Source: Ramazzottius varieornatus
Lineage: Eukaryota > Animalia > Tardigrada
Assembly (NCBI GenBank): GCA_001949185.1
Contig: BDGG01000013.1
Span: forward strand, 679,423 to 743,422
Length of the DNA stretch: 64,000 nt
Direction of reading: 5' to 3'
How positions within the stretch are numbered: position 1 is the first letter of the stretch; every line of letters starts with the position of its first letter. The position numbers and the translations under genes were made by a program. Positions 11,328 to 36,500 of this stretch are shown piece after piece. The notes beneath the pieces were generated by a model. That model was not told the origin of the DNA and searched no databases. It was given only the letters and a program-made list of their open reading frames with translations.

Positions 11328-12903
11328 ATGGGGGACATTACCAGATCAATGGAGCGGAAATGGTCCTGTGGAATTGCGGCCATTACACGCTGTCACAAGT
11401 ACAATCTGTCAGCTTATGACGTTATGTCATGTTGCCCGAGTTTTGTCTACTTGCGTTTTCTCCTTTGTGGAGCCCCAGCGCCACCAAGTGACGAGATACC
11501 TGTATCCGAGAAGAACGTCGGGTGGAGAGCTGCAAGGTACCTGCGGTTTATTTTACCGTCCATCATAGCCGTCGCCTTCTGTATTGACTTCGGAGACTGG
11601 ATCGTAAACGGCGAAGAGAACCTCCACTTGCAACAGACAAGGATAATCTCCATGCTGACGTATCTCGACAGTCAGTTCGGATTATGGCTCGGTGCATCGA
11701 CCACCTTCGTGTTCATCTCCAAGTCTGGCAGGTTTATGCATTGCCTGAAATCTCTTGCTCGATCCATGGCACACCTGGACATGGTACCCGTTCGACAAGC
11801 TCGACGAAGAGTCAAAACTGCGTGGATCATCTTGGGCCTCCTACTTCTCTTCTCGACATTCCGTGCGGTGTACGGAATATACGAAGTTAGTAATCCGAAT
11901 GTCTTATGGCGGCCTCGGCGGTACTTTATCTGGAAGCTACCTTCCGGATTAGTCGCTATCGTTCTACGGTCATTTTTCTTCCTCAGTGAAGTCTCCGTCT
12001 TGCCCATTTACATGGTATTCATTTTCGTCTGCGCCAAGTACACTGAATGCTTCGTAATTCTTAATAAGCAAATCAAAGATCTGCTGAAAAGCTTGGACGG
12101 AAACGATACAGATAGCCCTTCGATAGACGGTGCCACTTTCCTGAAGAAACTCAAGTCGCTCTCGCTGAAAGAAGTGACATTGAGCCAAGCCTTGGCCGAC
12201 TTGGACTCTTGCTTCTCCATGCAGGTGTTGTGCTTTTCCGTCAACAACTCTCTTGGAGTGTTTAGCAAAATTGCCAAGTGTTTCGTCTCAGCAGCTTTTG
12301 TAAACTGCATGGATTATATCAAGTTTATCATGAAATCGTCGATGTATGTTGCCGCCCTTGGGCTGATTATTGTTTTCCCAGCCATTCTCCATGAAAGCGT
12401 AAGACAGAATTTCCGTCTCGAAAGCTTTGTTTTATCACTATGGTGGATTTGGATGCTTTTCTACAGAGTTCGAGATCCATTGCGCTCTGGCAGAAACTGA
12501 TTGCTGTGCGGCAAGAAAGTCGACAGAAGGTACACTGTTTGAGCAGATAGCGCACTTAACCGTGATTTTAAGAGAAACGCATTGCTTCTTCGATCGTAGG
12601 ATTACTGTGTGGAAGAAGGAGAAGTGTTGGTGACGCTTCTGCAGCGTACCACTGTGCGACCACATTCCCTGTCGGTAGCAGGAATCGCAACATTAACCCG
12701 CTCTTTCGGAGTTACTGTAGGTGGCGCCTTCCACTTATTACATATGTAGTTTCCTGGCGATACACGCGAAAGCTCCATGACCTTTACAGATGCTGCTGGG
12801 TTTTGCCGGTTTTACCTGTTTTCTCATTGATCGCGCCGAAAATTATCAATCGGAGCTGGATGACTTGACGGTAGCCAACGTGACTTGCTCCTGCCAGTGC
12901 TGA
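11328..12903 (+). CDS. Gustatory receptor-like 7TM chemoreceptor (exons 11328-12398, 12467-12529, 12600-12716, 12790-12903)
   Basis: Multiple hydrophobic helices. A long first exon is followed by three phase-0 introns near the C-terminus, the classic GR gene layout. LSVAGIATLTRS resembles the GR 'hsa.GhF.l.r' pre-TM7 segment. Confidence 0.8.
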
Positions 12904-20096: not shown

Positions 20097-23000
20097 TCAG
20101 AAGGAAGTCGTGCTCCTGTACGATGTACTGTCATCCCGACCTTCAAACGAATCGTTCCGTCCGATATGAAAAACTTGTGCGGCATGGGGCTTCTCCATTG
20201 GGTCCTGCGAAATTCCCCTTCGCGAATCTAGCGTTCTAACGTTGAGTTTTCTGGCGTTAAGGGTTTCGTGGATAGACATGGGCATGGCAACAGTAGTGGC
20301 CGGTTGCTGCTCGGCATTTCGTTGAATAGCCAAGAAGCGCTTTCGGAAAATGATATCGAGAGTGGACACCGCTGCTTTTCGGCCAAGATCCATGGTCGAG
20401 GCACTAGTCTCAGCGTCGAAATCTTTGGCGTTCTTCAAGGACTGCAGTTCTCTTGCCACCTGAATGGCGTTTTCGCGAAGGTAGTCGAAACCGACACGCT
20501 TCTTATTCCGGCAGCAAGAAAGCTCCGTGCTGAAAAACAGATAAATCTGATAAAACTAGCTGTAGTGCATGATAAAGAAGGAGCGGGAAACAATCTTGGG
20601 ATAATTGTTATCCTCCCAGCACTGTTTACCGGTGTTCCATATCAAGATTAATTTTGGAAAAGTTTTTCCTAGTCTGCCTACCCTGCAAGAAGGTTGGAGA
20701 AGGTTCCCCAACGATGCATTAGCATGGCGACGAACTGAACAAGCATTAGCAGGAAGAAGAACAGAAGGAAGGCGATGCCGGTGGGCTCGATTTGCACGGT
20801 GACTGGTTTCTTCGCGGTTCCTCCGAAGGGACTGACGACCCATATGAACAAGTCGTCGCGTCGAAGTTCAAGTAAAAAGACCATCAGGATGAATAGGCTG
20901 TTGATCATCAGAAAGCCGAGGGAAAGTTTGTTGCGGAACTTCTTCATCTGTTCCACCATGGCAGCTTCGAGACCAGCATTGGTACCGGCGAGTGGGCTAA
21001 GGTAGGTGGTGATGAGCTCCCGCCAGAACGAGGCTTCGATCACCTCGAGTGTTTCGGGTTCGGCGCGGATCAGGTCTTCGTCGTCCATCCAATGATCGTT
21101 CTCAATTACTACGGGACCTGATGGATCGGTCAAAGCTAAAAACGGAAACGAAAGTTACCGTTCAACCATGTCTCAACGCCAACATTACTAGTAATCGTAA
21201 CGCGATAAACTGCAGGAACAGACTGCCGAAAGGTCCGAATTTTGACCTTAGACAGTCCTAACCAAGCGGGATTCTACCCATTATTCTGCGGGTATCTGCG
21301 GAACTGCACTGGGTCTGCGCTCGTTGTCGAATCGGCATTCGGAAACGTCCTCTGGTGATAATGAATTGAGAATCAGTATGAAGGCTTAGTACAGTAATCT
21401 CTCCCAAAAGTATATTAGGTCGTCACTCAAGCGAGCTTTTACAACTTTTCCAGCTGTAATGTGTATAGGTTTGCTTGAGTGACGTGATGTACTCTTGGGA
21501 AAAGTTATTGTAGGTCCTTTCGTGGTCATGTTTTCTGTTCAGTAGAGATTAGCAACCTACAGAGCAGCCATTCGGTGAGTTTGTCATTGTTGACATTCTT
21601 CCCGAATTTCTCGTAGAATTCTTCCGTCGATTTTACAGCCGTCCGTACGGTGGAAACAGAGAAGTTGGCTGAGGCTTCGGATATCTGGTCCCAGTCTTGC
21701 TGGGGAGCCATATTCAGTGGCATGCTCAGTCCGTCAGGTGGCGGCACTCTTGGCCTGAACCCCTGCAAGCCCATCCGTCTGGCTCTAAGTCGGTGTTCCA
21801 ACACCTGCAGCTTCTTCCCTAGCTGTAACAGTTCCCTTCCTATCAGGTCACCGAACGGTCCTTCCAGCGGACTGATGTCAGGTGGAGGACAACAAATAAT
21901 CCCACAGAATTTCCCACAAGCGAAACTGACACTTTTCTTCCCATGTGGAAGAAACTTCTTCATCTCCTCAATCACATCAATGGACGGTACTTTGTGCGCA
22001 TGGGGACTATTGGGATCGATTTGGGCTTCTTTGGCAATCTGCTCCCATCGTTCGATCTGACGAGCCATCTGTTCGTCCTCGTCAGGCTTGGTGATACCGT
22101 TGGCCAGGTGGAACGTGCAGAGGGAATGGATGATGGTGAAGAGGTAGGTGGTGGGTATGGCGATGAAGTAGATGGGGGCAAAAGCAATGTTCCACATTTC
22201 TTGTGGATGGAAGACGGCGGGAAGGACGGTGGAGAAAATGAAGGCGACCATGAAGATGGAGACTGGTGACGCAGAGAACCAGGAGTGGTGGAGTTGAACG
22301 GTGGCACTGATGAGCACAGCTAACATGACCAGTCCGTATCCCGCACTGAAAATCCTCATGACGATATCCTACCAAAAAGCACTCGTACCAACATCAGTCT
22401 CATGATCAATGTACGTACAGTCTCACAATGGACATCAAGTGGGAAAAACGGGAACTGCAGCTTGAAGCCAGTTTATACTTCCCTGTCTTGATATATTGGG
22501 TTCGCTAGCAAACTGGCTAGAAAAACTGACACGAAAAAATTTCACTGATTGCTCCTGTAAGAAGCTCTTCTTTCTGGCCTTCTATCAATGCTTATACAAG
22601 GAGAAGAGAGCGGATAGTCAAACGTGCAGCGCCTACTCTCTCTTTTTCTGTTGATGACAAGTTCGCCATGCGATTTCGCACTGACAAGTCCGCTGTATTC
22701 TCCTTGTACCCATCCATGCGCTGCTAAACCGAGCACTGCTGAGTTGATCGACAATCAGTACTGGGCTGCTTGGTTTAGCAGCTCGAAAGTGCTTGTGCCA
22801 AGTATTTTTCTATGACCAGTCATTTTCCAGCAGATATACAGTAGCTTTGTCGGTATACAACAGTACCGGAGCAGATTTGAACTGGTTGTTCGGCCTACCT
22901 GGAGTTTTGGTGAGCCGAAGACGCAGATGGTCAGAAATATCGAGACCGGTCCAAGGTTGGAAGCCAGAGCCAAGAACATGTTCATCTGGAACAAATCGAC

Positions 23001-26000
23001 AAGCGACGTCACGATGACCAGGAAGACTGTGCCGCAAGCAAAGATGGACGACACCAGCGCCATCATCAGATATCCAATGTAAATTATTGTGACATGTTCA
23101 TTCCGATGTAGCACATTAGAGTACTGGCCAACAATGTCGGCCATGGCGGCCAGCTGCAGCGGGACGTCCCTCTGCGTCTCTTTGATGTATGCCGCGAATG
23201 TCTCGGGCACGTGCAGCATCACGTCGACCGCCGCGCAGTACTCCACTTTGTATCCTTTCTTGACCATGAGTGAACATAGCCATTGTTCGTTGCCCAGACG
23301 GAACTGGATGAACTCTTTGGCGTCCTCGGGTATCATGGCGAACTTCTTGGTGACATTGTCGTCCATTAGAGCTGAGGCGCGGAACATGGTGAAACCTGCG
23401 CGAATTCGCAGCAGAGAACCGAGCATGTGCTCGGTAGCTTGGTCCAGCCAGTACCGCATGGAGTACTCGAACATCTGATACCTACAAAAGTAACGTAGAA
23501 AAATGTTGCTCATGGTTCCACAGCTTCTTCCAGGTCATAATATTATCTCGATTGGTGCAGAAACGATTCAATATCCTTTATTCTTGCATGCGTCTAAGCG
23601 TTTAGGAAGGTTAGTTTCTGATGCGAAGTCACGTCGTGAGGAATCAGAGCAACTAATTACCAGACAATGGGACCGGTACCGGTCGGTCGCAGTCGACAAG
23701 TGGTTGCTCCAATATGTTTGGCTTGCTTGAGGGTGTCGAGCAGTCGAGTGACCGCCGAGGGCTTGAACCTCACCGCACCCGAGCAGAACAGGACGAACGA
23801 GTTGTGGGCAAAGTGCTCTTTGCGTTCAAGCTCATTAGGCAATTGCATTATCTTGTGACCCAGCACATAATAGAGTGCCATGACTTGAGACCATCGGTCG
23901 CCAGTCCGCATCAGGTTAGGATCCTTCAGATGCGCTGTACAACTGTTCCCACCGGGCAATATCCACTTCAGTTGTGCCCCATACGGCGTGGTAATCTTCT
24001 TCGGCGACCTCAGCTCGATGTTCAGCCCGTGAACCGCAGAAGCTGCTTCGTCGAAGGTTTGGATTAGATGAGCGGCCTGACGATCCAGCATGCGTTCTCC
24101 GCGAAGTGTGTCCATGAGGAAAGCGTGCTCGAAAAAGAGGTGGCATTCCATCTCGAAATAGTCGGGATCTGTATCGATGAGGAACTTCAGGGCGTTACGG
24201 CGAGCGCACTGTTCTTCGTCGAGAAGTAGGATGGACTTGAGGCTTTCCAGCACATCGTGGTCTGTTGTGCCGTTGAGAAAGGCGCAGGTGTACAGATGGG
24301 AGGTCTTCTCGAATTTGGCCTTGGCTTTAGTGCGCGGTGATATCGGTCCTTCGTTTTGCTCGATGAGCTTGCTGAAGTTAAGGGTCTTCCGGGAAGATTC
24401 AGCTGGTGAGCGCAGTCGGTTCAAGGTGGACGACAGATCCAAGGGGAAGCTACCAAAATCCGGTAGAGCGAACAAACTGCAAAAAGTTTGCCGTTTAGTC
24501 GGTACTTTGATTCCTTCCCTCTTCGGTCTTAATGAGTGTTCTCTTCTTGCTCTTCAGGCCCACCCTGCTTTAGCTTTCAAGCTTACAACGCGTTCACGTA
24601 CAGTGTATGCTGAAGGATTCTTCTACGGCAGTCGCATTGCAGGAAACAGCCTGCTAGCTCTCGCTTACCCTCTTGTCGAAATGGTTTTTAACAGCGACGT
24701 GTATCGTGCATACGGACCGTACTCGAATTCAGAAGTATTTTCAAAACTCCAGGAAGTTTCGACTGTGTTCCTCGCTGGTACTTTTTTTTCTACCAGTGCT
24801 TACTGGTTTGTCTTTCGACGTTCCGGAACAGGCCACCAAATGTGCGCGACGGTCCACCAGTGGCTGACTAGCCACAAGAACCACAGCCAGCTGAATTGGC
24901 TCTCCAGCATATGCAAGTAGCCATATTGACTGCACTTAATGTCCACTAAGCTGGGCAGCACATCATCCATAGCACAAGGATCAGCGCGTAGCGCTTCACA
25001 GACGGCGATGGCCACTGACACTACGATCATCAAACAAGTAAACACATTACATTGCCTAACAAACAAACATTACGTGACTTATCACGTATTAAATGTCCAC
25101 TGACCTGTCGCCGGAGTGACTAAAGAGAATGGAATGGAGAAGCTGAAGACGTGAATCCGAATACGGCAAGCATACTTGGCACAGATGTTCCCCAGGAAGC
25201 CCGCTGCGGAACAGATGACTGCGATCAGGAGAAAAGCAGCGTTGGGCTTCCAGAACCAAAAACGTTGTCGACGCTCAATGAACGTCCCGTTAACCGTCCT
25301 TCCGCCCAATTCAACCGAGCCAGTCCCGGTAAAAACATTCTTCAGGTCGAATATATTAACATCATAGTATCCTACGATCATAACATTGCATAAATATTCG
25401 TAGAAAAATTCCAAAACCATGTCTACCTCCGCCTAAAAAGCTCATGAGAAAAGCGTATTGTGAAAGCTCCGGAAAGAATTCGGGTTCTCCAAGTTCATTT
25501 CCTCTGTGTAACAAATATTTCTCCACTTATTCACCGGAAGATAGGGCATGCCAGGCAGCAATCCATCCCAACACCACGATGATTTTCCACAGCGACACGA
25601 ATAAGTATATTTTGGTCTGTGTCTGGTCGATGTTAGTGCGATGACGAGAAAGCCAGCGGACAAAGGAAATTGGTGAGTCAGTAGAAACGTAATTTTCCCA
25701 CCAGCGAACGGAGATCAGTATGAGCGAGACCGGCAGTGTCCAGCTGTATATCCCACTTTCCGATAAAAGTCCGAAGAGTAAAGCAGAGAACTGACAGGCG
25801 AACGCTACTACATCGAGGACGATTTGTAGTGCGAAGTACGAGTTTGCTCTGCTGCGGCTGAATATGGCGAGTATTGTGGGTAGGAAACACAGAGCACTGG
25901 TCAGCATTAACCCGGATGTAATGTCGGTGTTGGGAAGAACTTCAAAGAGGAACAAAAGAGTCCCGAGCAGGTGTAGCGTCTCCGTGACGAAAGCCTGCAG

Positions 26001-27143
26001 TCCACCGTACTCTCAGAATTATTCGTAGGAAATTGAAATTATCAATAGATTGTCGTGACTGGTGCTCTTCATATGTCTCACTTACGATAATCCAGGTGGC
26101 GTTAGTCTGTGGACCGTGAATCTTCCGAAGAAGCACTTTCCGTAAGCATGATAACCAGTTAATGATTTCCGGTGTCAATATGCAAAAGCATATGGACCAA
26201 ATAACAGCCACATACTTTTCTTTGTGGAGCGAATCAGCTGAAAGAAAAAGATACAACCAGATTTAAATACCTATGTAGAAATTCTTAGAAAAATGTCTTG
26301 TCGGTAATGCTGTCTTCCAGTGACCGTGATAACGTACAGATTACCCTATCGAACCCGCTGCTGGGATCAATAAATCTGTTGGTAGCGGTTGCGTTGATTT
26401 TTCCAGGCCGGACAGTGGTGCTCGGAATGACCGCGCATTTTTGGCGTTCGGTGAGCAGGGTTCCATTGTGAATATTTGAGGTTAGTAATACCATGAACAA
26501 TTTGGATGTAATTCCTAACACAAATATCAGCAAGAATGTCACAACGTAGGCCACCACTTTGGACACTTGTAGTAATCCATCGAAGAATATTTTATCACAG
26601 CGCTTTGGCACTTCTATGGATTGAAGTTTGAAGGCGTCCCAGCCCGCTTGTCTTTGCTCCATCTCACTACAAAATAATCAGTGTTAAATGACAGTTTTGA
26701 ACTGTCGGCCTTGCCGATGAAGTCTGCCGGTCTTTCGAAAAGTCGGAAGAGTTTCACATGTTAAAACAACATCGTGACTGCAACGTAGTCACTGATTCCG
26801 CGGCAGCAATCCAGTGTTATCGTTGAGCGACCTGACGTAACCGCAAAAGTGCCCATCGGCAGAAAAGCCTCGCGAATTAGCCAGTCAAGATAACAAGTCT
26901 AACCTGAAGATGGTCTGAGTAATGCGGCCAAATAGCTGACACTTACCTGGGAGAGGAAGTGGCCTCTTGTTCACTTGAGAAAAGTGGAAAATCGCCCATT
27001 CTGGTGTCGGGCCGGCTGGTGACGGAACGGGTTGCCAACTGGAAAATATGCGATTTGGAGCTGGAGATTTCATACTCCTGATCGGGCGTCGGACTGTAGC
27101 CGTACCTCGACGCCCCAGATCGAGACGTGATATCGCAGTCCAT
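20097..27143 (-). CDS. Chitin synthase homologue (metazoan CHS, GT2) with degenerate catalytic motifs; ~11 exons, ~1,570 aa
   Basis: Scaffold motifs GWDAF, SVRWWENYV, KYACRIRIHVFSFSIP, LKSILLLDEEQCARR, DPDYFE, TPYG, HLKD, RWSQVM, GPIVWYQMFEY, ATEHMLG, ALMDDNV, FWRELITTYLSP, IEPTG..QFVAMLMHRWGTF. Manual splicing gives an uninterrupted frame. Confidence 0.95.
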
Positions 27144-29345: not shown

Positions 29346-30629
29346 TCAGGTGATAAGGTATGACTTGTCGGCCACCAACATAAAATCTTATTACAACTTT
29401 CCCCAGTTTGAATCTAATCCTTTTCAATCGAAGTATTCACCATTACTATCGACACACTTTTGCCATTTTTCCGGCAGACAAGATAGGCCTTTACGGAAGA
29501 ACTCGAGAGAAAGAGAACCGGCGAAGTTCTCGAAGGCACTTTTCACAGCTTCTTCGGAATTAAATTTTCTTCCTCTCAAAAAGTTATCAAAATTCAAAAA
29601 GAAGTGATAATCTGTTGGAGCTAAGTCAGGACTGTATGGTGGATGAGGAAGAGTTTCCAGACCGAGCTCGCGTAATTTGGCAGAAGTCTTTTTCGCGGAG
29701 TGAGCTTTTGCGTTGTCGTGTAGCAGCAGGGGCTTGTCACGATTGACCAACTTTGGTTGCTTGACGGTCAGCTTCTTCATCATTTCCTCCAGTTCCAGAG
29801 AGTAGTAGTCTGCTACTTTTGTTTTGCCAGGAGGAAGAAAGTCATAGTGCACTATCCCTTCCATTGTCCACCAAACAGTAACCATGATCTTGCGTTGGTG
29901 AAGCTCAGGCTTTGGAATAGTTTTCGGGACTTCACCTGGACTCAAAATTACCTTCTTCCGCTTCCGGTTGTTGTAAAGAATCCACTTCTCATCACACGTA
30001 ACAATTCGATGCAGGAAAGGTTCGTTTCTGGAACGGTTGAGGAGAGAAAGACACACGTCCACACAATGCCTTTTCTGGAGTGCGCTAAGTTTATGAGGTA
30101 CCCACTTTTCCAACTTTTTCACCTTACCGATCTGACGAAGGTGCAAATCGATAGTCACGGGTGATATATTGAAGTGTTGAGACAATACGGCAGACGTTTG
30201 GGAAGGATCGGACTCCACCAGCTTTCTCAGCTCGTCGTTGTTCACTTTCAGTTTTGGCCTTCCGTGAGGGTGATCTTCAAGACTGAAATCTCTCGAACGG
30301 AAACGAGCATACCATCGTTCCACCGTACGTTCGTTAGTGGCTTCTTCACCAAACACATTGTTGATATTCCGGGCTGTCTGTGCTGCGTTGGTGCCGCGAC
30401 GAAATTCATACTCGAAAATAGTCCGTAACTTTCTCTTATCCATGGGCACGCCAACAACTCCACAGAGAGGGCAGAAGCAACAAACTAACATAAACGAAGC
30501 AGCGAAAGATAGTAGACGAACACTAGCATCGACACAAAAAAACGAGACGAAACGATCGCGCTAAAAGAGAGATATGGATTTTTCAATGTGAGACTGGTGT
30601 GAGCCGACAAGTCATACCCTATCACCTGA
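29346..30629 (-). mobile_element. Full-length mariner transposon
   Basis: 27-bp TIRs TCAGGTGATA(A/G)GGTATGACTTGTCGGC with one mismatch. TA duplications at 29344-29345 and 30630-30631. Length 1284 bp. Confidence 0.97.
29424..30443 (-). CDS. Intact mariner DD34D transposase, 339 aa, Hsmar1/cecropia-like
   Basis: MDKRKLRTIFEYEF..ARNIN..NERTV, WVPHKL, IVTCDEKW, LLHDNA, PPYSPDLAPTDYHFF; 34 residues between the second and third Asp. No introns or stops. Confidence 0.97.
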   Translation of the reverse strand: MDKRKLRTIFEYEFRRGTNAAQTARNINNVFGEEATNERTVERWYARFRSRDFSLEDHPHGRPKLKVNNDELRKLVESDPSQTSAVLSQHFNISPVTIDLHLRQIGKVKKLEKWVPHKLSALQKRHCVDVCLSLLNRSRNEPFLHRIVTCDEKWILYNNRKRKKVILSPGEVPKTIPKPELHQRKIMVTVWWTMEGIVHYDFLPPGKTKVADYYSLELEEMMKKLTVKQPKLVNRDKPLLLHDNAKAHSAKKTSAKLRELGLETLPHPPYSPDLAPTDYHFFLNFDNFLRGRKFNSEEAVKSAFENFAGSLSLEFFRKGLSCLPEKWQKCVDSNGEYFD

Positions 30630-31106: not shown

Positions 31107-33519
31107 TATCAGGGCGCACTCATATGACACAAAACTTCTGCAGCCATTGAACCAGAGATACTTAGCCTGGCCTAATACAGCAAACATGGAAGTAAAGTCA
31201 CCGTGTTTTTGCGTGAGTGTGAAGAAGAAGGTTGAGACAAATTGTTCCAGCGTACAACAGCCTGAGTCGCTTTCTTGCCAGAAATCTCCTCCGCATCTGT
31301 GCGACGTGATGACGTTTCCGGATCTGGATGACGACAGCGACACCATTCTTCGTATCTGAGCCAAACGCTTCTTCGACCAGCAATGTTATCCGCCAATCCG
31401 AATTCACTACCGTCTGGGAGATTACAGTGTATCGATACTTCGACAAGAAGGAAACCTGTAAGAAAATTTTACATGCAGTTCATCAATAGGGAAGCTTCAT
31501 TTCACCTCTGCGTTCAATATTAGGATCAGGCTATACTGCTGTGCCGTCTTCGTGCTGCTTTTCTCCCCTTCCAGCCCTACAAAGAAGTTGAACCGACAAA
31601 AGCCAGCCGATGTTGACCTTACCACTAGAAACGCAAGCGTCGTATTAGGATGGTTCTTTCAGTCTTGCGTTCAGAGTTCAGTACACAGTACCCCAGTTCG
31701 TCCGGTGCACCGTACCATACTTACGGAAAACGTGGCACCTTCCAAGGCAACGTTCTAGCAACCGGGTCAGCTGGCGCACCATGAGCTGTAGTTTGTACAG
31801 GATGGTTTGGATCCAGTCCCGCAGTACAACGCCGCAGGCCCGCTAAAGGTGCGCAGAAAGCGTCGGGTGAAGCGATTATTCCCACTGAAGCAAGAATACT
31901 ACCTAATCAGGGGTTTTTCATAAGGTAAATTTTGCGGCCTAAAATCTTTACTCTGGAACCGAATCTCCATTCCTTCCGAACAAGATATTCGGATGCAACG
32001 AGAAAAGTTGTCTTCAGTGGTACTGGGATACCCTATGAACTCGACGTCACATACACCATCGTTCCCGGAATATTCGGGAATTCGACTTGTGCACATTCGA
32101 CCGCGATTCGGCCCGTATAGACCTAGTCGTATAAACCTATTGTGCTGATTGAACAGCACAGCTGATCAGTGAGGCGATTTACGGGATTTGGGAGCGCCAC
32201 GGTGCGAGTTCGGGCTGGAGGAGCATCGAAAGGGGAGCTCGAATCTTCGGTGCGCAGGATATCTAAAAATTGAGCAGCCAACCAAAACGTAAATCGAAAA
32301 AGCTTTGACGGAGAGTCCATTACATTTCGGCACTGGTTTTAGTTCGCGGGAATCTGGACGGTGGAACCGCAACAGACGTCTGGACGAAGATAGGAATCGC
32401 AGTCGGTAGATGGCGCCATCTACAGCCATAACTCGACCATTTGAAGTCCCCGTTGACCCGTGCGTGTCGAACCAAAGCCACTCTCGTTGCGATTAGGCCA
32501 TGAAACTGCCGAAGAAGTTTTTTCGAGACAAACTTTTTCACGAACCGCACTAGATGAAACCTTCAACTTACAGAATGCCAAAGAATGAGAAATGTGAGAC
32601 AATCAACCACTAAGTTATAGGAAGAAAACCGCTCGCAGGTCGAAAATTCCTGCTCTCCTACCCTTCTCCGATTCTGGCCGCTACATTAACATTACTGCTT
32701 GGACATTACTGCTTGGAAGTAAGTAGGAAGCCTTGCTTCCTACTTACTTCTTATTGTCTCTCTGCATGCCTCCCTTTATTTTTCTACGCAGCGCGGTTCA
32801 TATGGTTAGTGAGCACTTCCCCCGCTATTTGCGATAAATGCAAGTTTTATGACTGGTTTCACGGCCCTAACCGCTGCGAGAGTGACTTTGGTCGATCACT
32901 AGAAGAAGCTCGTCGCTTCCATTCATTAGCGATAGGGGTGCGAACATAGATCTGATCGACGTTTTGAATTATGGCGGCTGCGTCAAACAAGTAATGGCCG
33001 CACCCCGCGCGATCTTGGAGATTCAGCTAAAGTCTGCGGGTGACATTAAACATCTAAGATTGCTGCTTAATTATAAGGATAACACCTGCATCGCTGCACA
33101 GCCGCGAAAGGATTAACAACCGACAATTAATTTCTAAAAAAAGTACTGCATAATGGGAGCTATCCAATCATTCATGCTTAGATCCTTCCGCTCTGGCTAG
33201 TTGGATTATTCCACCATTCGATCATGGCTGAAGATTAGACTGATCATGTAAGTTTTTCTGATGAGAACAACATAATCAAAATGTCAGCTTATCATAAGGT
33301 TTTCGAGAACGACCCTTTCTACGCTGCTGCACATGTATGTGCTTGTTGACGTGCTAAGTTATTTCCCTTTTGAACAGCGTAAAGTTGACAAGCGAGCAAT
33401 GATAGATTAAGTGTTAGTGACCTTTAAAGCACCAACGAGGGCTTCAGAAGCTGCAGTACCACTTGCAAATTCTACTGTGGCTACGCCAGTCCGGCGTCCG
33501 CACACAATATCGTAACAGA

Positions 33520-36500
33520 ATGGTTTCGGCTATGCTATCCAACTCATCCATCATCGTTAACTTTTCGACCCAGTCCGCTAACTTATCTTCGAATGTCAGT
33601 GGCGTTTCGTCAGATCGTCCAGACGAAGGTGCGGCATGGTGGCTCATGCTTCTGGTTATATTGGTTGTATTCATCACGGTTACCGCAAACTTTGCCGTAA
33701 TGCTCGCTTTCCTCATGGAGCCAAAATTAGGAACGCCATTCAACTTTTTGGTTCTCAACATGACGGTCGCTGACTTCCTAGATGGTGTACCGGACACGCC
33801 GCTGACGATTACAGGCTACACTTACTTCGGTTACTGGCCCTACTCCGTGGTCCTTCAGTGAACGACAAAATAAGCTTCAAAAATGGGTGTCAATGGAACC
33901 AGCTTGACACAGCAAATCAAATTTGCTCATTGGCTAAACGCTGATTTTGATTCCTCGTCCGTATTTGAGACCCTCCGCCCATTTTTGAAGCGTATTTTGT
34001 CATGCACTGTATGTTCGTTATGAATCTACGTGGACTACACTCTGTTAGCTGTCAGTATCTGATCAGTGATCATCATGTCCGTCGATCGCACGTGGTGCGT
34101 CACTTGGCCTGCTGCCTACCTAAGACTCAATCCTTAAACCAAATGTATCTGGGGAGTGGCATTTACCTGGATCGTCACGAATGTTTTCAACTTACCAGGT
34201 ATTCCGCTTTTGCCCGGTTAGATGTTATGTAGTTACCGTCCTTGGGATGTGTGGTCGAAAAACCCCGTTCTGGTTGGTGATCTAATACGACTCATCTGTT
34301 CTGCATGCCACGCCCAGGTCAAGCGGCTCGCTTGTCTCCCTTCCCCAGCTCTCCTGGGTACTGTAACCCTAAGCCTTGAAGTGATGTCACAGCTGAGTAA
34401 AAAATGGGATTGCTTCGGTAGATCATACGTCACGAGCGCGGGCTGAAATGAACTTTCAGGCGTGCCGTTTGTTGGCAGCTGAATTGTTCTAATAGGTTTT
34501 GTCTACACACGGATCTATTTTGCGGTAAATCAAACCGCATCCAGAGCATGTGTTTGGGATGCTGAAGGCCTTCCCCCCATCCAGAAATTCCCAGCGGTGT
34601 GTCGTACTGAGGCGAAGGATTTTCCATTTTATACTTCGCCTCAGCTCCTACATTCGCGGGGGGCTTTTAACGACTCAGCCGGAGCTGATACGAAGCTTAG
34701 TCGAAACTCAGTCGAAGTTCAGTCGTTGTATTATTCAGAGCTCAGATGAAGCTTCCGAACAGCTGCCAGCCGAAGCTGAGGCGAAATTCTGCTTAGACAA
34801 CAGCGTAAAAAAGTTTCGGTTTCGAAAAAAATCCAAGCGAAAGCAACCCTAGGTTCTGGAAAATAGAACACAGCAATTTCAAAACAGGACACTGAAATCA
34901 ACAGACCAAAATCAAGCTCAAAGGATACCAGACGTCCAGGGAAACAGTGTCGCGTCGACAAAAGAAACACTAAAGAAAACACGGGAACGTTCTGCAGTTC
35001 AGCGAAGGGATACTCGTTGGCTCCGACGACGCTGACGGTGTTCCAGTCTTTATGAGATGTTCCCATGTGCCGAATACGCGACCTAGAACAAGCCTGTCGT
35101 TGAGCGAAGATCGTCTTATCATCAGGGGACTGGGAGCATCAGGCATTGACTTACCCGTGAGTCAGGTTGGGAGTTCCCTTTCCGGTTTTCTACACATCCT
35201 CCATCCATCCCCAAAGCACCCTGTAGAAACAAAGACGAAACGGTTTAGCTGTTAACAAGATAAACAGGATAGACTGCCACGTTCAACCAAGAAAACGATC
35301 CGGGTCGAAGCTTTGTCGGGTTGACAGGCTGTGTTGAACTGGGCACGGCCTTGTTCTGCACACATGTGTGCGGCCAAGGCCGTGCCGCTGTTGATTACTC
35401 TAGACAGTCAACAATCAGCCGAACGAAATTTCCGAAAAGACATAAAGCAGATCTCACCTCTTCCTCCCACTTCTAATTACGGTTCACCGGGAGCTTGTGA
35501 GAGTTGTCCGATTAAGGATGACCAGGAGGCAGGAACAGAGCTTTGTGGTGGGTAGTAAACCATGTATCACTTCCTCAAGGCCTGCAAGAGAAAAATGCTA
35601 GGTGACGCACCAGCCCATGTTGAGACTGTCCATTTTGCGCGAGTTCGGCGAGTTGATCAAAGCCGTTGCCGCAGCGGAAAGATTTCCTTCCCACCTGGAT
35701 TCGGCTAACTCCACCGACATAGAACGCCCAAAAGATGCGGAAAGGGAACTCCCCTCTCACCTGCAGTGACGATGCAGAACCTGAAGCGGCAGACGTTCAG
35801 CTGGCAGCTTCAATGTCGAAAGAAGAATGGCCGGCCGTTGTAGACTTACCTTGGGTGAATCCAGAACACGCTTCACTAATAACGCTCTGCCAGCTGGATT
35901 CCTCTCCCTTAGCAAACAGGCCAGTAAACCTGCCCATCAACATGAGCACAGAACCACATTGATATGCAAAAGCTGAAACGTTCTAGAAGGATTACTTCAA
36001 AGAAGCGAGATAAAGCGACCGTTAAATCGAAGAAAGTGAAATTGCTTTTCGAGTTGAAATTCGTTCAACTCGCGTGGTGAGTTGATCGCCCAGCTTGATT
36101 GATCATCCACTGCGCTCAATCAAGCCATAACTCATTGATTGGAGCCAGTTCGCCCCAGCTTCGCCGCGTATTGTCGTGACAGTGACCAGTCGGAGCTGGC
36201 TCGCAGTAGAATGATGGATTTCAGACTTTCTGGGTAGGGTCCCGAATGGGCCACGTCGTTCTGGGGGTTCACAGTGGGAAACGGCTGGCTACCCATGAGC
36301 ATAGGTGTGGTTTGTTATGGCATCACCGTGAAACAATATTTGAAAAGCGGTAGGTCAGAAAAAACGGGATCGGCAAGCCATGCTGGTTCTGACCCTAATA
36401 ATAATTGACCCTATAATATAGAGATTAAGTTGCCACTCCCGTTCACTTTGCAACTGTAGCTACGGCCTTGCTCCGCCTCTTTCGTGACGTGTAACTACAT

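What the first reader, a model, noticed from the sequence alone, without database searches (positions are those of the whole stretch)
20097..27143. Full-length chitin synthase with every catalytic motif replaced: candidate CHS pseudoenzyme
Seen: the gene splices into an unbroken frame of about 1,570 aa with all TM regions, and the GT2 domain aligns closely with arthropod CHS as I recall it. The active-site motifs, however, are changed: CATMWHE->CAFLNGT, FFDDAF->FFEHAF, RHRKRWSQ->RTGDRWSQ, LDGDID->CSGAVR (~23775), CSPGCF->RIRAGF, GEDRWL->GNEQWL (~23285), QRRRW->ETQRD (~23170), SWGTRE->ANGITKP (~22095). Flanking residues (DPDY, TPYG, HLKD, YQMFEY, ATEHM, LMDDNV, VEY.AA) are kept. Established: EDR (catalytic base), QRRRW, DxD and SWG are required for chitin synthesis. 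Inference: losing all of them with no stop or frameshift fits selection for a non-catalytic role rather than decay, for example a regulatory or scaffolding subunit of CHS oligomers, a trafficking factor or a repurposed membrane channel. I do not know of a characterised metazoan CHS pseudoenzyme, but have not searched.
Basis: partly seen in the sequence, partly recalled or inferred. Interest (0 to 1): 0.9.

Follow-up and report, generated by a model that had tools for sequence, protein, structure and literature searches.

The report
Expressed, conserved dead chitin synthase paralogue
A tardigrade genome carries, beside two normal chitin synthase genes, a third full-length copy that has lost eight of its nine active-site motifs yet is transcribed, correctly spliced, conserved in other species and under purifying selection, so it is probably the first described "dead enzyme" of the chitin synthase family.

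Summary
On the minus strand of 20097-27143 lies an 11-exon gene with GT-AG introns throughout, encoding 1,571 aa with the usual animal chitin synthase (CHS) layout of 8+5+2 membrane helices. Spliced contigs from four independent studies confirm introns 1-9 and corrected one acceptor I had misplaced. Eight of the nine CHS active-site motifs are replaced; only QxFEY is kept. Of 98 columns nearly invariant in 83 canonical animal CHS, this gene keeps 57, while its two canonical paralogues in the same genome keep 95 and 98.

It is not decaying. A divergent strain differs at 26 synonymous and 7 non-synonymous sites (pN/pS 0.08, p=2e-11). Unnamed fragments from at least three other sources are 64-80% identical and carry the same replaced motifs. 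The clade has a long stem of at least 1.1 changes per site and short crown branches.

The genome matches Ramazzottius varieornatus by size and scaffold number. No paper in the library describes a CHS pseudoenzyme.

The function is inferred, not shown. The likeliest role is a non-catalytic membrane partner of the active CHSs (about 0.4). A complex prediction gave no verdict.

Two caveats apply. The acid at the catalytic-base position and the third Arg of QRRRW survive, so a remodelled ligand pocket is not excluded.

The parts
26947..27143 (-). Exon 1, with the first in-frame ATG at 27143; poorly conserved N-terminus
   Evidence: ORF list. Junction 26947/26666 is seen in spliced contigs of runs X1 and X7. 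No Pfam hit. The start codon itself is not verified.
26338..26666 (-). Exon 2, containing the first membrane helix
   Evidence: Junctions 26666/26947 and 26338/26237 in spliced contigs; model; hydropathy scan.
26086..26237 (-). Exon 3
   Evidence: Junctions confirmed in all four runs.
25535..25994 (-). Exon 4, N-terminal membrane domain
   Evidence: Marginal Pfam PF23000 (chitin synthase N-terminal domain) hit, E 3.6e-5, 23.3 bits against a cut-off of 23.5. Junctions confirmed.
25105..25371 (-). Exon 5; acceptor corrected from 25422 to 25371 by RNA contigs
   Evidence: Joint 25370-25534 (cut +1), skipping 163 bases, in all four runs; re-translated without a stop.
24804..25020 (-). Exon 6, last N-terminal membrane helices
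   Evidence: Junction 25020/25105 in X1 and X7; junction 24804/24476 in all four runs.
23661..24476 (-). Exon 7, first half of the GT2 domain. Carries the degenerate motifs M1 (CAFLNGT), M2 (FFEHAF), M3 (RTGDRWSQ) and M4/DxD (CSGAVRF)
   Evidence: Alignment to canonical CHS and to orthologue fragments; motif coordinates; orthologues P0155 and P0156.
22899..23481 (-). Exon 8, second half of the GT2 domain plus two membrane helices. M5 QxFEY is kept; M6 (RIRAGF), M7 (GNEQWL) and M8 (ETQRD) are degenerate
   Evidence: orthologues P0154 and P0151.
21561..22368 (-). Exon 9: membrane helices, degenerate M9 (ANGITKP in place of SWGTRE), and a soluble coiled-coil-like region that is strongly conserved among orthologues
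   Evidence: Orthologues P0160, P0161 and P0162 at 71-80% identity; alignment.
20682..21135 (-). Exon 10, containing the two C-terminal membrane helices
   Evidence: Junction 21135/21561 in all four runs; hydropathy scan.
20097..20529 (-). Exon 11 and the TGA stop at 20097-20099
   Evidence: Model. Intron 10 was outside the stretch laid. The X1 contig runs 865 nt beyond 21000. That equals the rest of exon 10 (318) plus exon 11 (433) plus about 114 nt of 3' UTR, so it fits splicing but does not show it directly.

Best explanation
This is a genuine, expressed gene for a full-length paralogue of animal chitin synthase that can no longer make chitin. It keeps the membrane architecture and the GT-A scaffold. 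It has lost the motifs that bind UDP-GlcNAc and metal (M1, M4/DxD), the Glu of ED, the gate-lock motif (M6), Q, two of the three arginines and the acceptor-binding Trp of QRRRW, and SWG. The changes arose in a burst on the stem of the clade. Since then the protein, including the new residues at the former active site, has been held by purifying selection in several species. These points are shown. The next step is inferred. It most likely acts as a non-catalytic membrane subunit or regulator of the two active chitin synthases of the same genome, joining their oligomers or guiding their assembly and trafficking, much as dead rhomboids (iRhoms) and pseudokinases serve their active relatives. My odds are about 0.85 for a conserved non-catalytic CHS paralogue and about 0.4 for the partner-of-CHS mechanism.
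For: The gene model is intact and spliced in contigs of four studies. There is a single genomic locus, so the spliced contigs cannot come from a retrocopy. Eight of nine motifs are replaced, and only 57 of 98 near-invariant CHS columns are kept, against 95 and 98 in the two canonical paralogues. The roles of the motifs are taken from the review PMC12653383. The X7 strain shows 26 synonymous and 7 non-synonymous differences, pN/pS 0.08, binomial p=2e-11. Orthologue fragments at 64-80% identity, with different intron positions, carry the same or similar replacements: FFEHAF, RSGERWSQ, TSGSTR/TSGAAR, RIRSGF, GNDQWL, ETQRE, GNCSRK/GNCPRK. The clade has SH-aLRT support of 100, a stem of at least 1.1 changes per site and crown branches of 0.03-0.34. 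For the partner idea there are two points: CHSs form dimers and probably higher oligomers (PMC12653383), and the conserved coiled-coil-like region after the central membrane helices is shared with canonical CHS.
Against: No experiment or prediction supports binding to the active CHSs; the complex job gave no verdict. No co-expression data could be obtained. The acidic residue at the catalytic-base position and the third Arg of QRRRW are retained, which could mean that a ligand pocket still matters. The pN/pS value rests on a single contig from one run. The orthologue fragments are unnamed, so their species and the age of the clade are unknown.
Confidence: 0.8

Rival explanations
1. It is a non-catalytic protein whose role does not depend on the active chitin synthases. 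It might use the retained membrane domain as a channel or transporter, or act as a receptor or anchor for chitin or another glycan.
For: The full set of 15 membrane helices is kept. QxFEY, which flanks the entrance of the translocation channel, is kept. The N-terminal domain has a marginal hit to the Pfam family described as a 'putative transporter domain'.
Against: The other two channel-entrance motifs (gate lock M6 and QRRRW) and SWG are lost. Nothing points to a particular cargo.
Confidence: 0.3
2. The active site is remodelled rather than dead. The protein would still bind a nucleotide, sugar or polymer ligand and would either catalyse a different reaction or sense that ligand.
For: Conservative acid-for-acid changes occur at two key positions: D to E in M2, and D to E (or D kept in P0154) at the catalytic base. 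The diphosphate-binding third Arg of QRRRW and RWSQ of M3 are kept. The replacement residues are themselves conserved among orthologues.
Against: Both Asp of DxD, the M1 nucleotide-binding motif, the Glu of ED and the acceptor Trp are all gone. To my knowledge no GT2 enzyme works without these. The SWG replacement varies between orthologues.
Confidence: 0.12
3. It is a decaying or recently inactivated pseudogene that is still transcribed.
For: The catalytic motifs are lost. The end branch is very long when the gene is placed alone in a tree, 2.4 against about 0.3 for its paralogues.
Against: There is a 1,571-codon open frame with eleven correctly spliced exons. pN/pS is 0.08. The motif loss is shared by orthologues at 64-80% identity with open frames and different intron positions, and crown branches are short.
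Confidence: 0.03

Closest known systems
Animal (metazoan) chitin synthases of glycosyltransferase family 2, such as insect CHS1/kkv, C. elegans CHS-1/CHS-2 and the two canonical CHS genes of this genome (contig 2 near 750 kb, contig 12 near 65 kb)
   Same: It is homologous over nearly the whole length: 32-37% identity to the own-genome paralogues with E 1e-122 to 1e-150, and 31-43% to library CHS. The 8+5+2 membrane-helix layout is the same. QxFEY and many scaffold residues are kept.
   Different: Eight of the nine active-site motifs are replaced. Pfam Chitin_synth_2 does not detect its catalytic exons, although it detects the two paralogues. Before the orthologue fragments were added, its branch was about eight times longer.
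Pseudoenzymes that serve their active relatives, such as iRhoms and Derlins (dead rhomboid proteases) and pseudokinases. This comparison is from my own knowledge and was not tested here.
   Same: It is a full-length homologue of an enzyme, it lacks the catalytic residues, and it is expressed and under purifying selection.
   Different: It belongs to a different fold and family, a processive membrane GT2 synthase. No partner, regulatory or trafficking role has been shown for it.
Fungal and oomycete chitin synthases with solved structures (CaChs2 7STL, ScChs1, PsChs1)
   Same: There is weak but specific sequence similarity of exon 8 to 7STL chain A, E 0.0034. The M1-M9 motif framework is shared.
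   Different: These are very distant, catalytically active enzymes with a different membrane topology of six helices.

Membership tests
Animal chitin synthase (GT2), as a homologous family | Significant full-length sequence homology to known animal CHS | tested here: met
   Exon 8 alone finds 786 relatives at E<=0.001, 128 of them at E<=1e-30. The ten looked up include chitin synthases of nematodes, insects, a spider and scallops. The local joined model aligns over more than 900 residues to the own-genome paralogue.
Animal chitin synthase (GT2), as a homologous family | Domain layout: N-terminal multi-helix domain, cytosolic GT-A domain, five membrane helices, then a soluble region and two more helices | tested here: met
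   The hydropathy scan gives 8+5+2 helices at the same relative positions as in P0024, an odonate CHS.
Animal chitin synthase (GT2), as a homologous family | Match to Pfam Chitin_synth_2 (PF03142) above its cut-off | tested here: not met
   No hit for either catalytic exon at E<=0.01, and the whole-genome scan with PF03142 finds only the contig 2 and contig 12 loci. This was tested exon by exon only; the joined protein was not sent to any search tool.
Functional chitin synthase (the enzyme) | DxD metal-binding motif (LDGDxDF) | tested here: not met
   CSGAVRF here and TSGSTRY/TSGAARF in orthologues; both Asp are lost.
Functional chitin synthase (the enzyme) | EDR motif (donor-binding Glu and catalytic-base Asp) | tested here: not met
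   GNEQWL here and GNDQWL in P0154. The Glu is lost and the Arg is lost; the base position is still acidic, E or D.
Functional chitin synthase (the enzyme) | QRRRW motif | tested here: not met
   ETQRD here and ETQRE in P0151. Only the third Arg is kept and the acceptor Trp is lost.
Functional chitin synthase (the enzyme) | Nucleotide-sugar binding motif M1 (CATMWHE), gate lock M6 (CSPGCF) and SWGTR | tested here: not met
   CAFLNGT, RIRAGF and ANGITKP.
Functional chitin synthase (the enzyme) | Incorporation of UDP-GlcNAc into chitin | not testable with these tools
   This needs a biochemical assay.
Pseudoenzyme | Homologue of an active enzyme that lacks essential catalytic residues | tested here: met
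   motif roles from PMC12653383.
Pseudoenzyme | Expressed and maintained by purifying selection, so not a pseudogene | tested here: met
   Spliced contigs from four studies; pN/pS 0.08, p=2e-11; conserved orthologues and short crown branches. Between-species dN/dS could not be computed because no orthologue DNA was available.
Pseudoenzyme | Demonstrated non-catalytic function | not testable with these tools
   The complex prediction gave no verdict. Genetics and biochemistry are needed.

The most novel reading that the evidence does not exclude
Tardigrades keep a lineage-specific, catalytically dead chitin synthase as an obligatory non-catalytic subunit or regulator of their chitin-synthase complexes. 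It would be the first pseudoenzyme of the chitin, cellulose and hyaluronan synthase class, and it would offer a way to study how such synthases assemble and how chitin deposition is controlled.
Probability: 0.35. Interest if true: 0.8.

Novelty: new variant of a known kind. Interest (0 to 1): 0.66.

Why it matters
Processive membrane synthases for chitin, cellulose and hyaluronan are thought to work as oligomers. How their assembly, trafficking and activity are controlled in animals is poorly understood. A naturally dead but conserved family member is a ready-made probe. It shows which parts of the protein matter apart from catalysis, and it may point to a regulatory subunit. It also adds a glycosyltransferase of this class to the list of enzyme families that have produced pseudoenzymes. 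Finally, it gives tardigrade biology a testable candidate for cuticle, feeding-apparatus or eggshell formation. I found no description of such a protein in the searchable literature.

Tried and rejected
1. Complex prediction of the exon 9 region against the matching region of the canonical contig 12 CHS gave no verdict: score 0.00, partner fold uncertain, controls not run. It counts neither for nor against binding.
No DNA of the orthologue fragments could be fetched, so there is no between-species dN/dS and no species assignment.
3. The 50%-identity representative library held no close relative. The top hit, P0001, is only a canonical CHS with two tandem catalytic domains.
4. The listing of cluster members gave no names or accessions for the orthologue fragments.
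5. The ESM Atlas search of exon 8 against unnamed clusters returned only weak bacterial glycosyltransferase-fragment clusters.
6. Placement of the clade among animal CHS is unresolved. It grouped weakly with tardigrade and nematode CHS in one tree and fell at the base in two others. The 'careful' tree search did not finish. A tardigrade-specific duplication is not rejected (AU p=0.17), and it is not shown either.
7. The ROOM-protein paper, the cnidarian CHS paper, the tardigrade moulting preprint and the salmon CHS paper contain nothing on this gene. The supplementary expression tables of the genome paper are not held.
8. Plus-strand ORFs inside the gene, including one of 247 aa, have no Pfam match and are taken as chance.
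9. My first acceptor for intron 4 (25422) was wrong and was corrected by the RNA contigs.
10. The joined (spliced) protein was used only in local scripts.
Full report
**What is there**

The minus strand of 20097-27143 carries a multi-exon gene whose open frames resemble chitin synthase (CHS). I assembled 11 exons, each intron bounded by GT..AG, with no internal stop.

Public runs labelled with one organism hold 44-69% of the sampled words of the 7,047-base stretch. The exons make up 68% of it. I laid contigs from four runs of four different studies on 21000-26999. They show nine joints that skip exactly introns 1-9, all with CT..AC ends on the plus strand, which is GT..AG on the gene's strand.

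Eight joints matched my model. The ninth moved the start of exon 5 from 25422 to 25371.

Two contigs (4,484 and 4,715 nt) cover almost the whole coding sequence. Intron 10 lay outside the stretch I could lay. The length of the X1 contig beyond position 21000 (865 nt) fits a spliced exon 10-11 plus about 114 nt of 3' UTR.

The runs are only guessed to be RNA. However, contigs without introns can come only from spliced RNA or from a retrocopy, and the genome holds a single locus for this gene.

**The organism**

The assembly has 55,842,812 bases in 200 contigs. This matches the published Ramazzottius varieornatus genome of 55.8 Mb in 199 scaffolds plus a mitochondrial genome (PMC5034306). This identification is an inference. 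Earlier scan notes on CAHS and Dsup-like genes nearby point the same way.

**The motifs**

A recent review lists nine conserved CHS motifs and their roles (PMC12653383):
- M1-M4 form the UDP-GlcNAc binding tub.
- In M7 (ED), the Glu binds the donor sugar and the Asp is the general base.
- M5 (QxFEY), M6 (the gate lock) and M8 (QRRRW) form the channel entrance. The third Arg of M8 binds the diphosphate and its Trp binds the acceptor.
- M9 (SWG) sits on a loop by the reaction chamber.

I aligned the local joined model with the two own-genome paralogues, six canonical animal CHS and ten orthologue fragments. The changes are:

| Motif | Canonical | This gene |
|---|---|---|
| M1 | CATMWHE | CAFLNGT |
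| M2 | FFDDAF | FFEHAF |
| M3 | RHRKRWSQ | RTGDRWSQ |
| M4 (DxD) | LDGDIDF | CSGAVRF |
| M5 | QKFEY | QMFEY (kept) |
| M6 | CSPGCF | RIRAGF |
| M7 | GEDRWL | GNEQWL |
| M8 | QRRRW | ETQRD |
| M9 | SWGTRE | ANGITKP |

Of 98 columns at least 95% identical in 83 canonical animal CHS, this gene keeps 57. The two paralogues keep 95 and 98. Among the 150 best relatives in a library of 1.8 billion representatives, 149 have EDR and 142 have Q[RK]RRW.

Pfam's Chitin_synth_2 model does not detect the catalytic exons. It does detect the loci on contig 2 and contig 12. Both of those carry every canonical motif.

Two details soften 'every motif replaced'. The base position is still acidic, Glu here and Asp in orthologue P0154. 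The third Arg of QRRRW is also kept.

**Not a decaying gene**

- **Strain comparison.** The contig of run X7, filed under the same organism label, differs from the window at 34 places. One is non-coding, 26 are synonymous and 7 are non-synonymous. That gives pN/pS 0.08. The chance of 7 or fewer non-synonymous changes out of 33 under neutrality is 2e-11.
- **Orthologue fragments.** Exon-by-exon searches of the 5.8-billion-protein collection returned ten short unnamed proteins from Logan and ENA assemblies, 64-80% identical to the model. They cannot come from this genome, which has one such locus.
- **Several species.** For the exon 9 region there are three distinct sequences, 64-82% identical to each other. 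Three fragments lie on one 63,624-nt contig and so belong to one species. Intron positions differ from ours.
- **Shared replacements.** All fragments carry the same or similar changes: FFEHAF, RSGERWSQ, TSGSTR or TSGAAR, RIRSGF, GNDQWL, ETQRE, and GNCSRK or GNCPRK.
- **Tree shape.** With these fragments in the tree, the clade has SH-aLRT support of 100, a stem of at least 1.1 changes per site and crown branches of 0.03-0.34. Those crown lengths are like or shorter than the branches within canonical CHS clades. Placed alone, the gene had an end branch of 2.4 against about 0.3 for its paralogues.

The picture is a burst of change followed by constraint.

**Origin**

The position among animal CHS is unresolved. 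A tree that unites the clade with the tardigrade canonical CHS is not rejected (AU p=0.17). The named relatives I looked up are nematode, insect, spider and scallop CHS.

**Surroundings**

- No plus-strand ORF inside the gene has a Pfam match.
- Upstream of the gene lies an intact mariner/Mos1-type transposase ORF at 29424-30491.
- A rhodopsin-family receptor exon lies at about 33463-33861.
- Nothing nearby suggests a functional link.

**How it most likely works**

Shown: it is a transcribed, spliced, conserved CHS homologue without the residues that the family needs to bind UDP-GlcNAc and metal and to hold the acceptor.

Inferred: it is a pseudoenzyme with a non-catalytic role. CHSs form dimers and are thought to form higher oligomers (PMC12653383). 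The membrane domain and the coiled-coil-like soluble region after the central helices are kept, and that region is the best-conserved part among orthologues at 71-80%.

I therefore rank the readings as follows:
1. A non-catalytic partner or regulator of the two active CHSs (about 0.4).
2. A CHS-independent membrane role (about 0.3).
3. A remodelled ligand-binding or catalytic pocket (about 0.12).
4. Decay (about 0.03).

A complex prediction for the exon 9 region against the matching part of the contig 12 CHS gave no verdict. It is not used as evidence.

**Comparison with what is known**

By homology and architecture the gene belongs to the animal CHS family. It fails every tested catalytic criterion of a functional CHS. 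It meets the tested criteria of a pseudoenzyme.

Full-text searches for chitin synthase together with pseudoenzyme, catalytically inactive, QRRRW or tardigrade found no description of such a protein. The library does not cover most subscription journals, so this is not proof of novelty.

**Limits**

- All database, family and complex searches used single exons by reference, and no search or fold of the joined protein was made.

Noticed in passing
window 29424-30491 (-): An uninterrupted 355-aa ORF with Mos1/mariner transposase domains (HTH_48, Transposase_1, DDE_3), about 2.3 kb upstream of the gene. It may be an intact mariner element.
   Followed up: partly
window 33463-33861 (+): An ORF with a weak rhodopsin-family 7TM receptor match (E 1.7e-6, just under the Pfam cut-off), probably one exon of a GPCR gene.
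   Followed up: no
window 22604-22894 (inside intron 8): Run X1 has a separate 291-nt low-depth contig lying wholly within the 530-nt intron 8, and run X2 has a contig with a loose end at 22720. This could be partial intron retention, an alternative exon or a small independent transcript.
   Followed up: no
window 21000-26740, run X7: The contigs of one run filed under the same organism label differ from the reference at 34 of about 4,700 transcript positions, roughly 3% at synonymous sites. This suggests a distinct strain or cryptic species under that label.
   Followed up: partly
window 25372-25422: An in-frame alternative acceptor (AG at 25423-25424) would add 17 codons to exon 5. None of the four runs uses it.
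   Followed up: yes
window 11328-12500 (+): A 390-aa ORF, long for this intron-rich genome, has no Pfam match.
   Followed up: no
protein libraries: Neither library returned a full-length protein of this clade, not even this genome's own annotated product, although the genome has a published annotation. This is unexplained.
   Followed up: no
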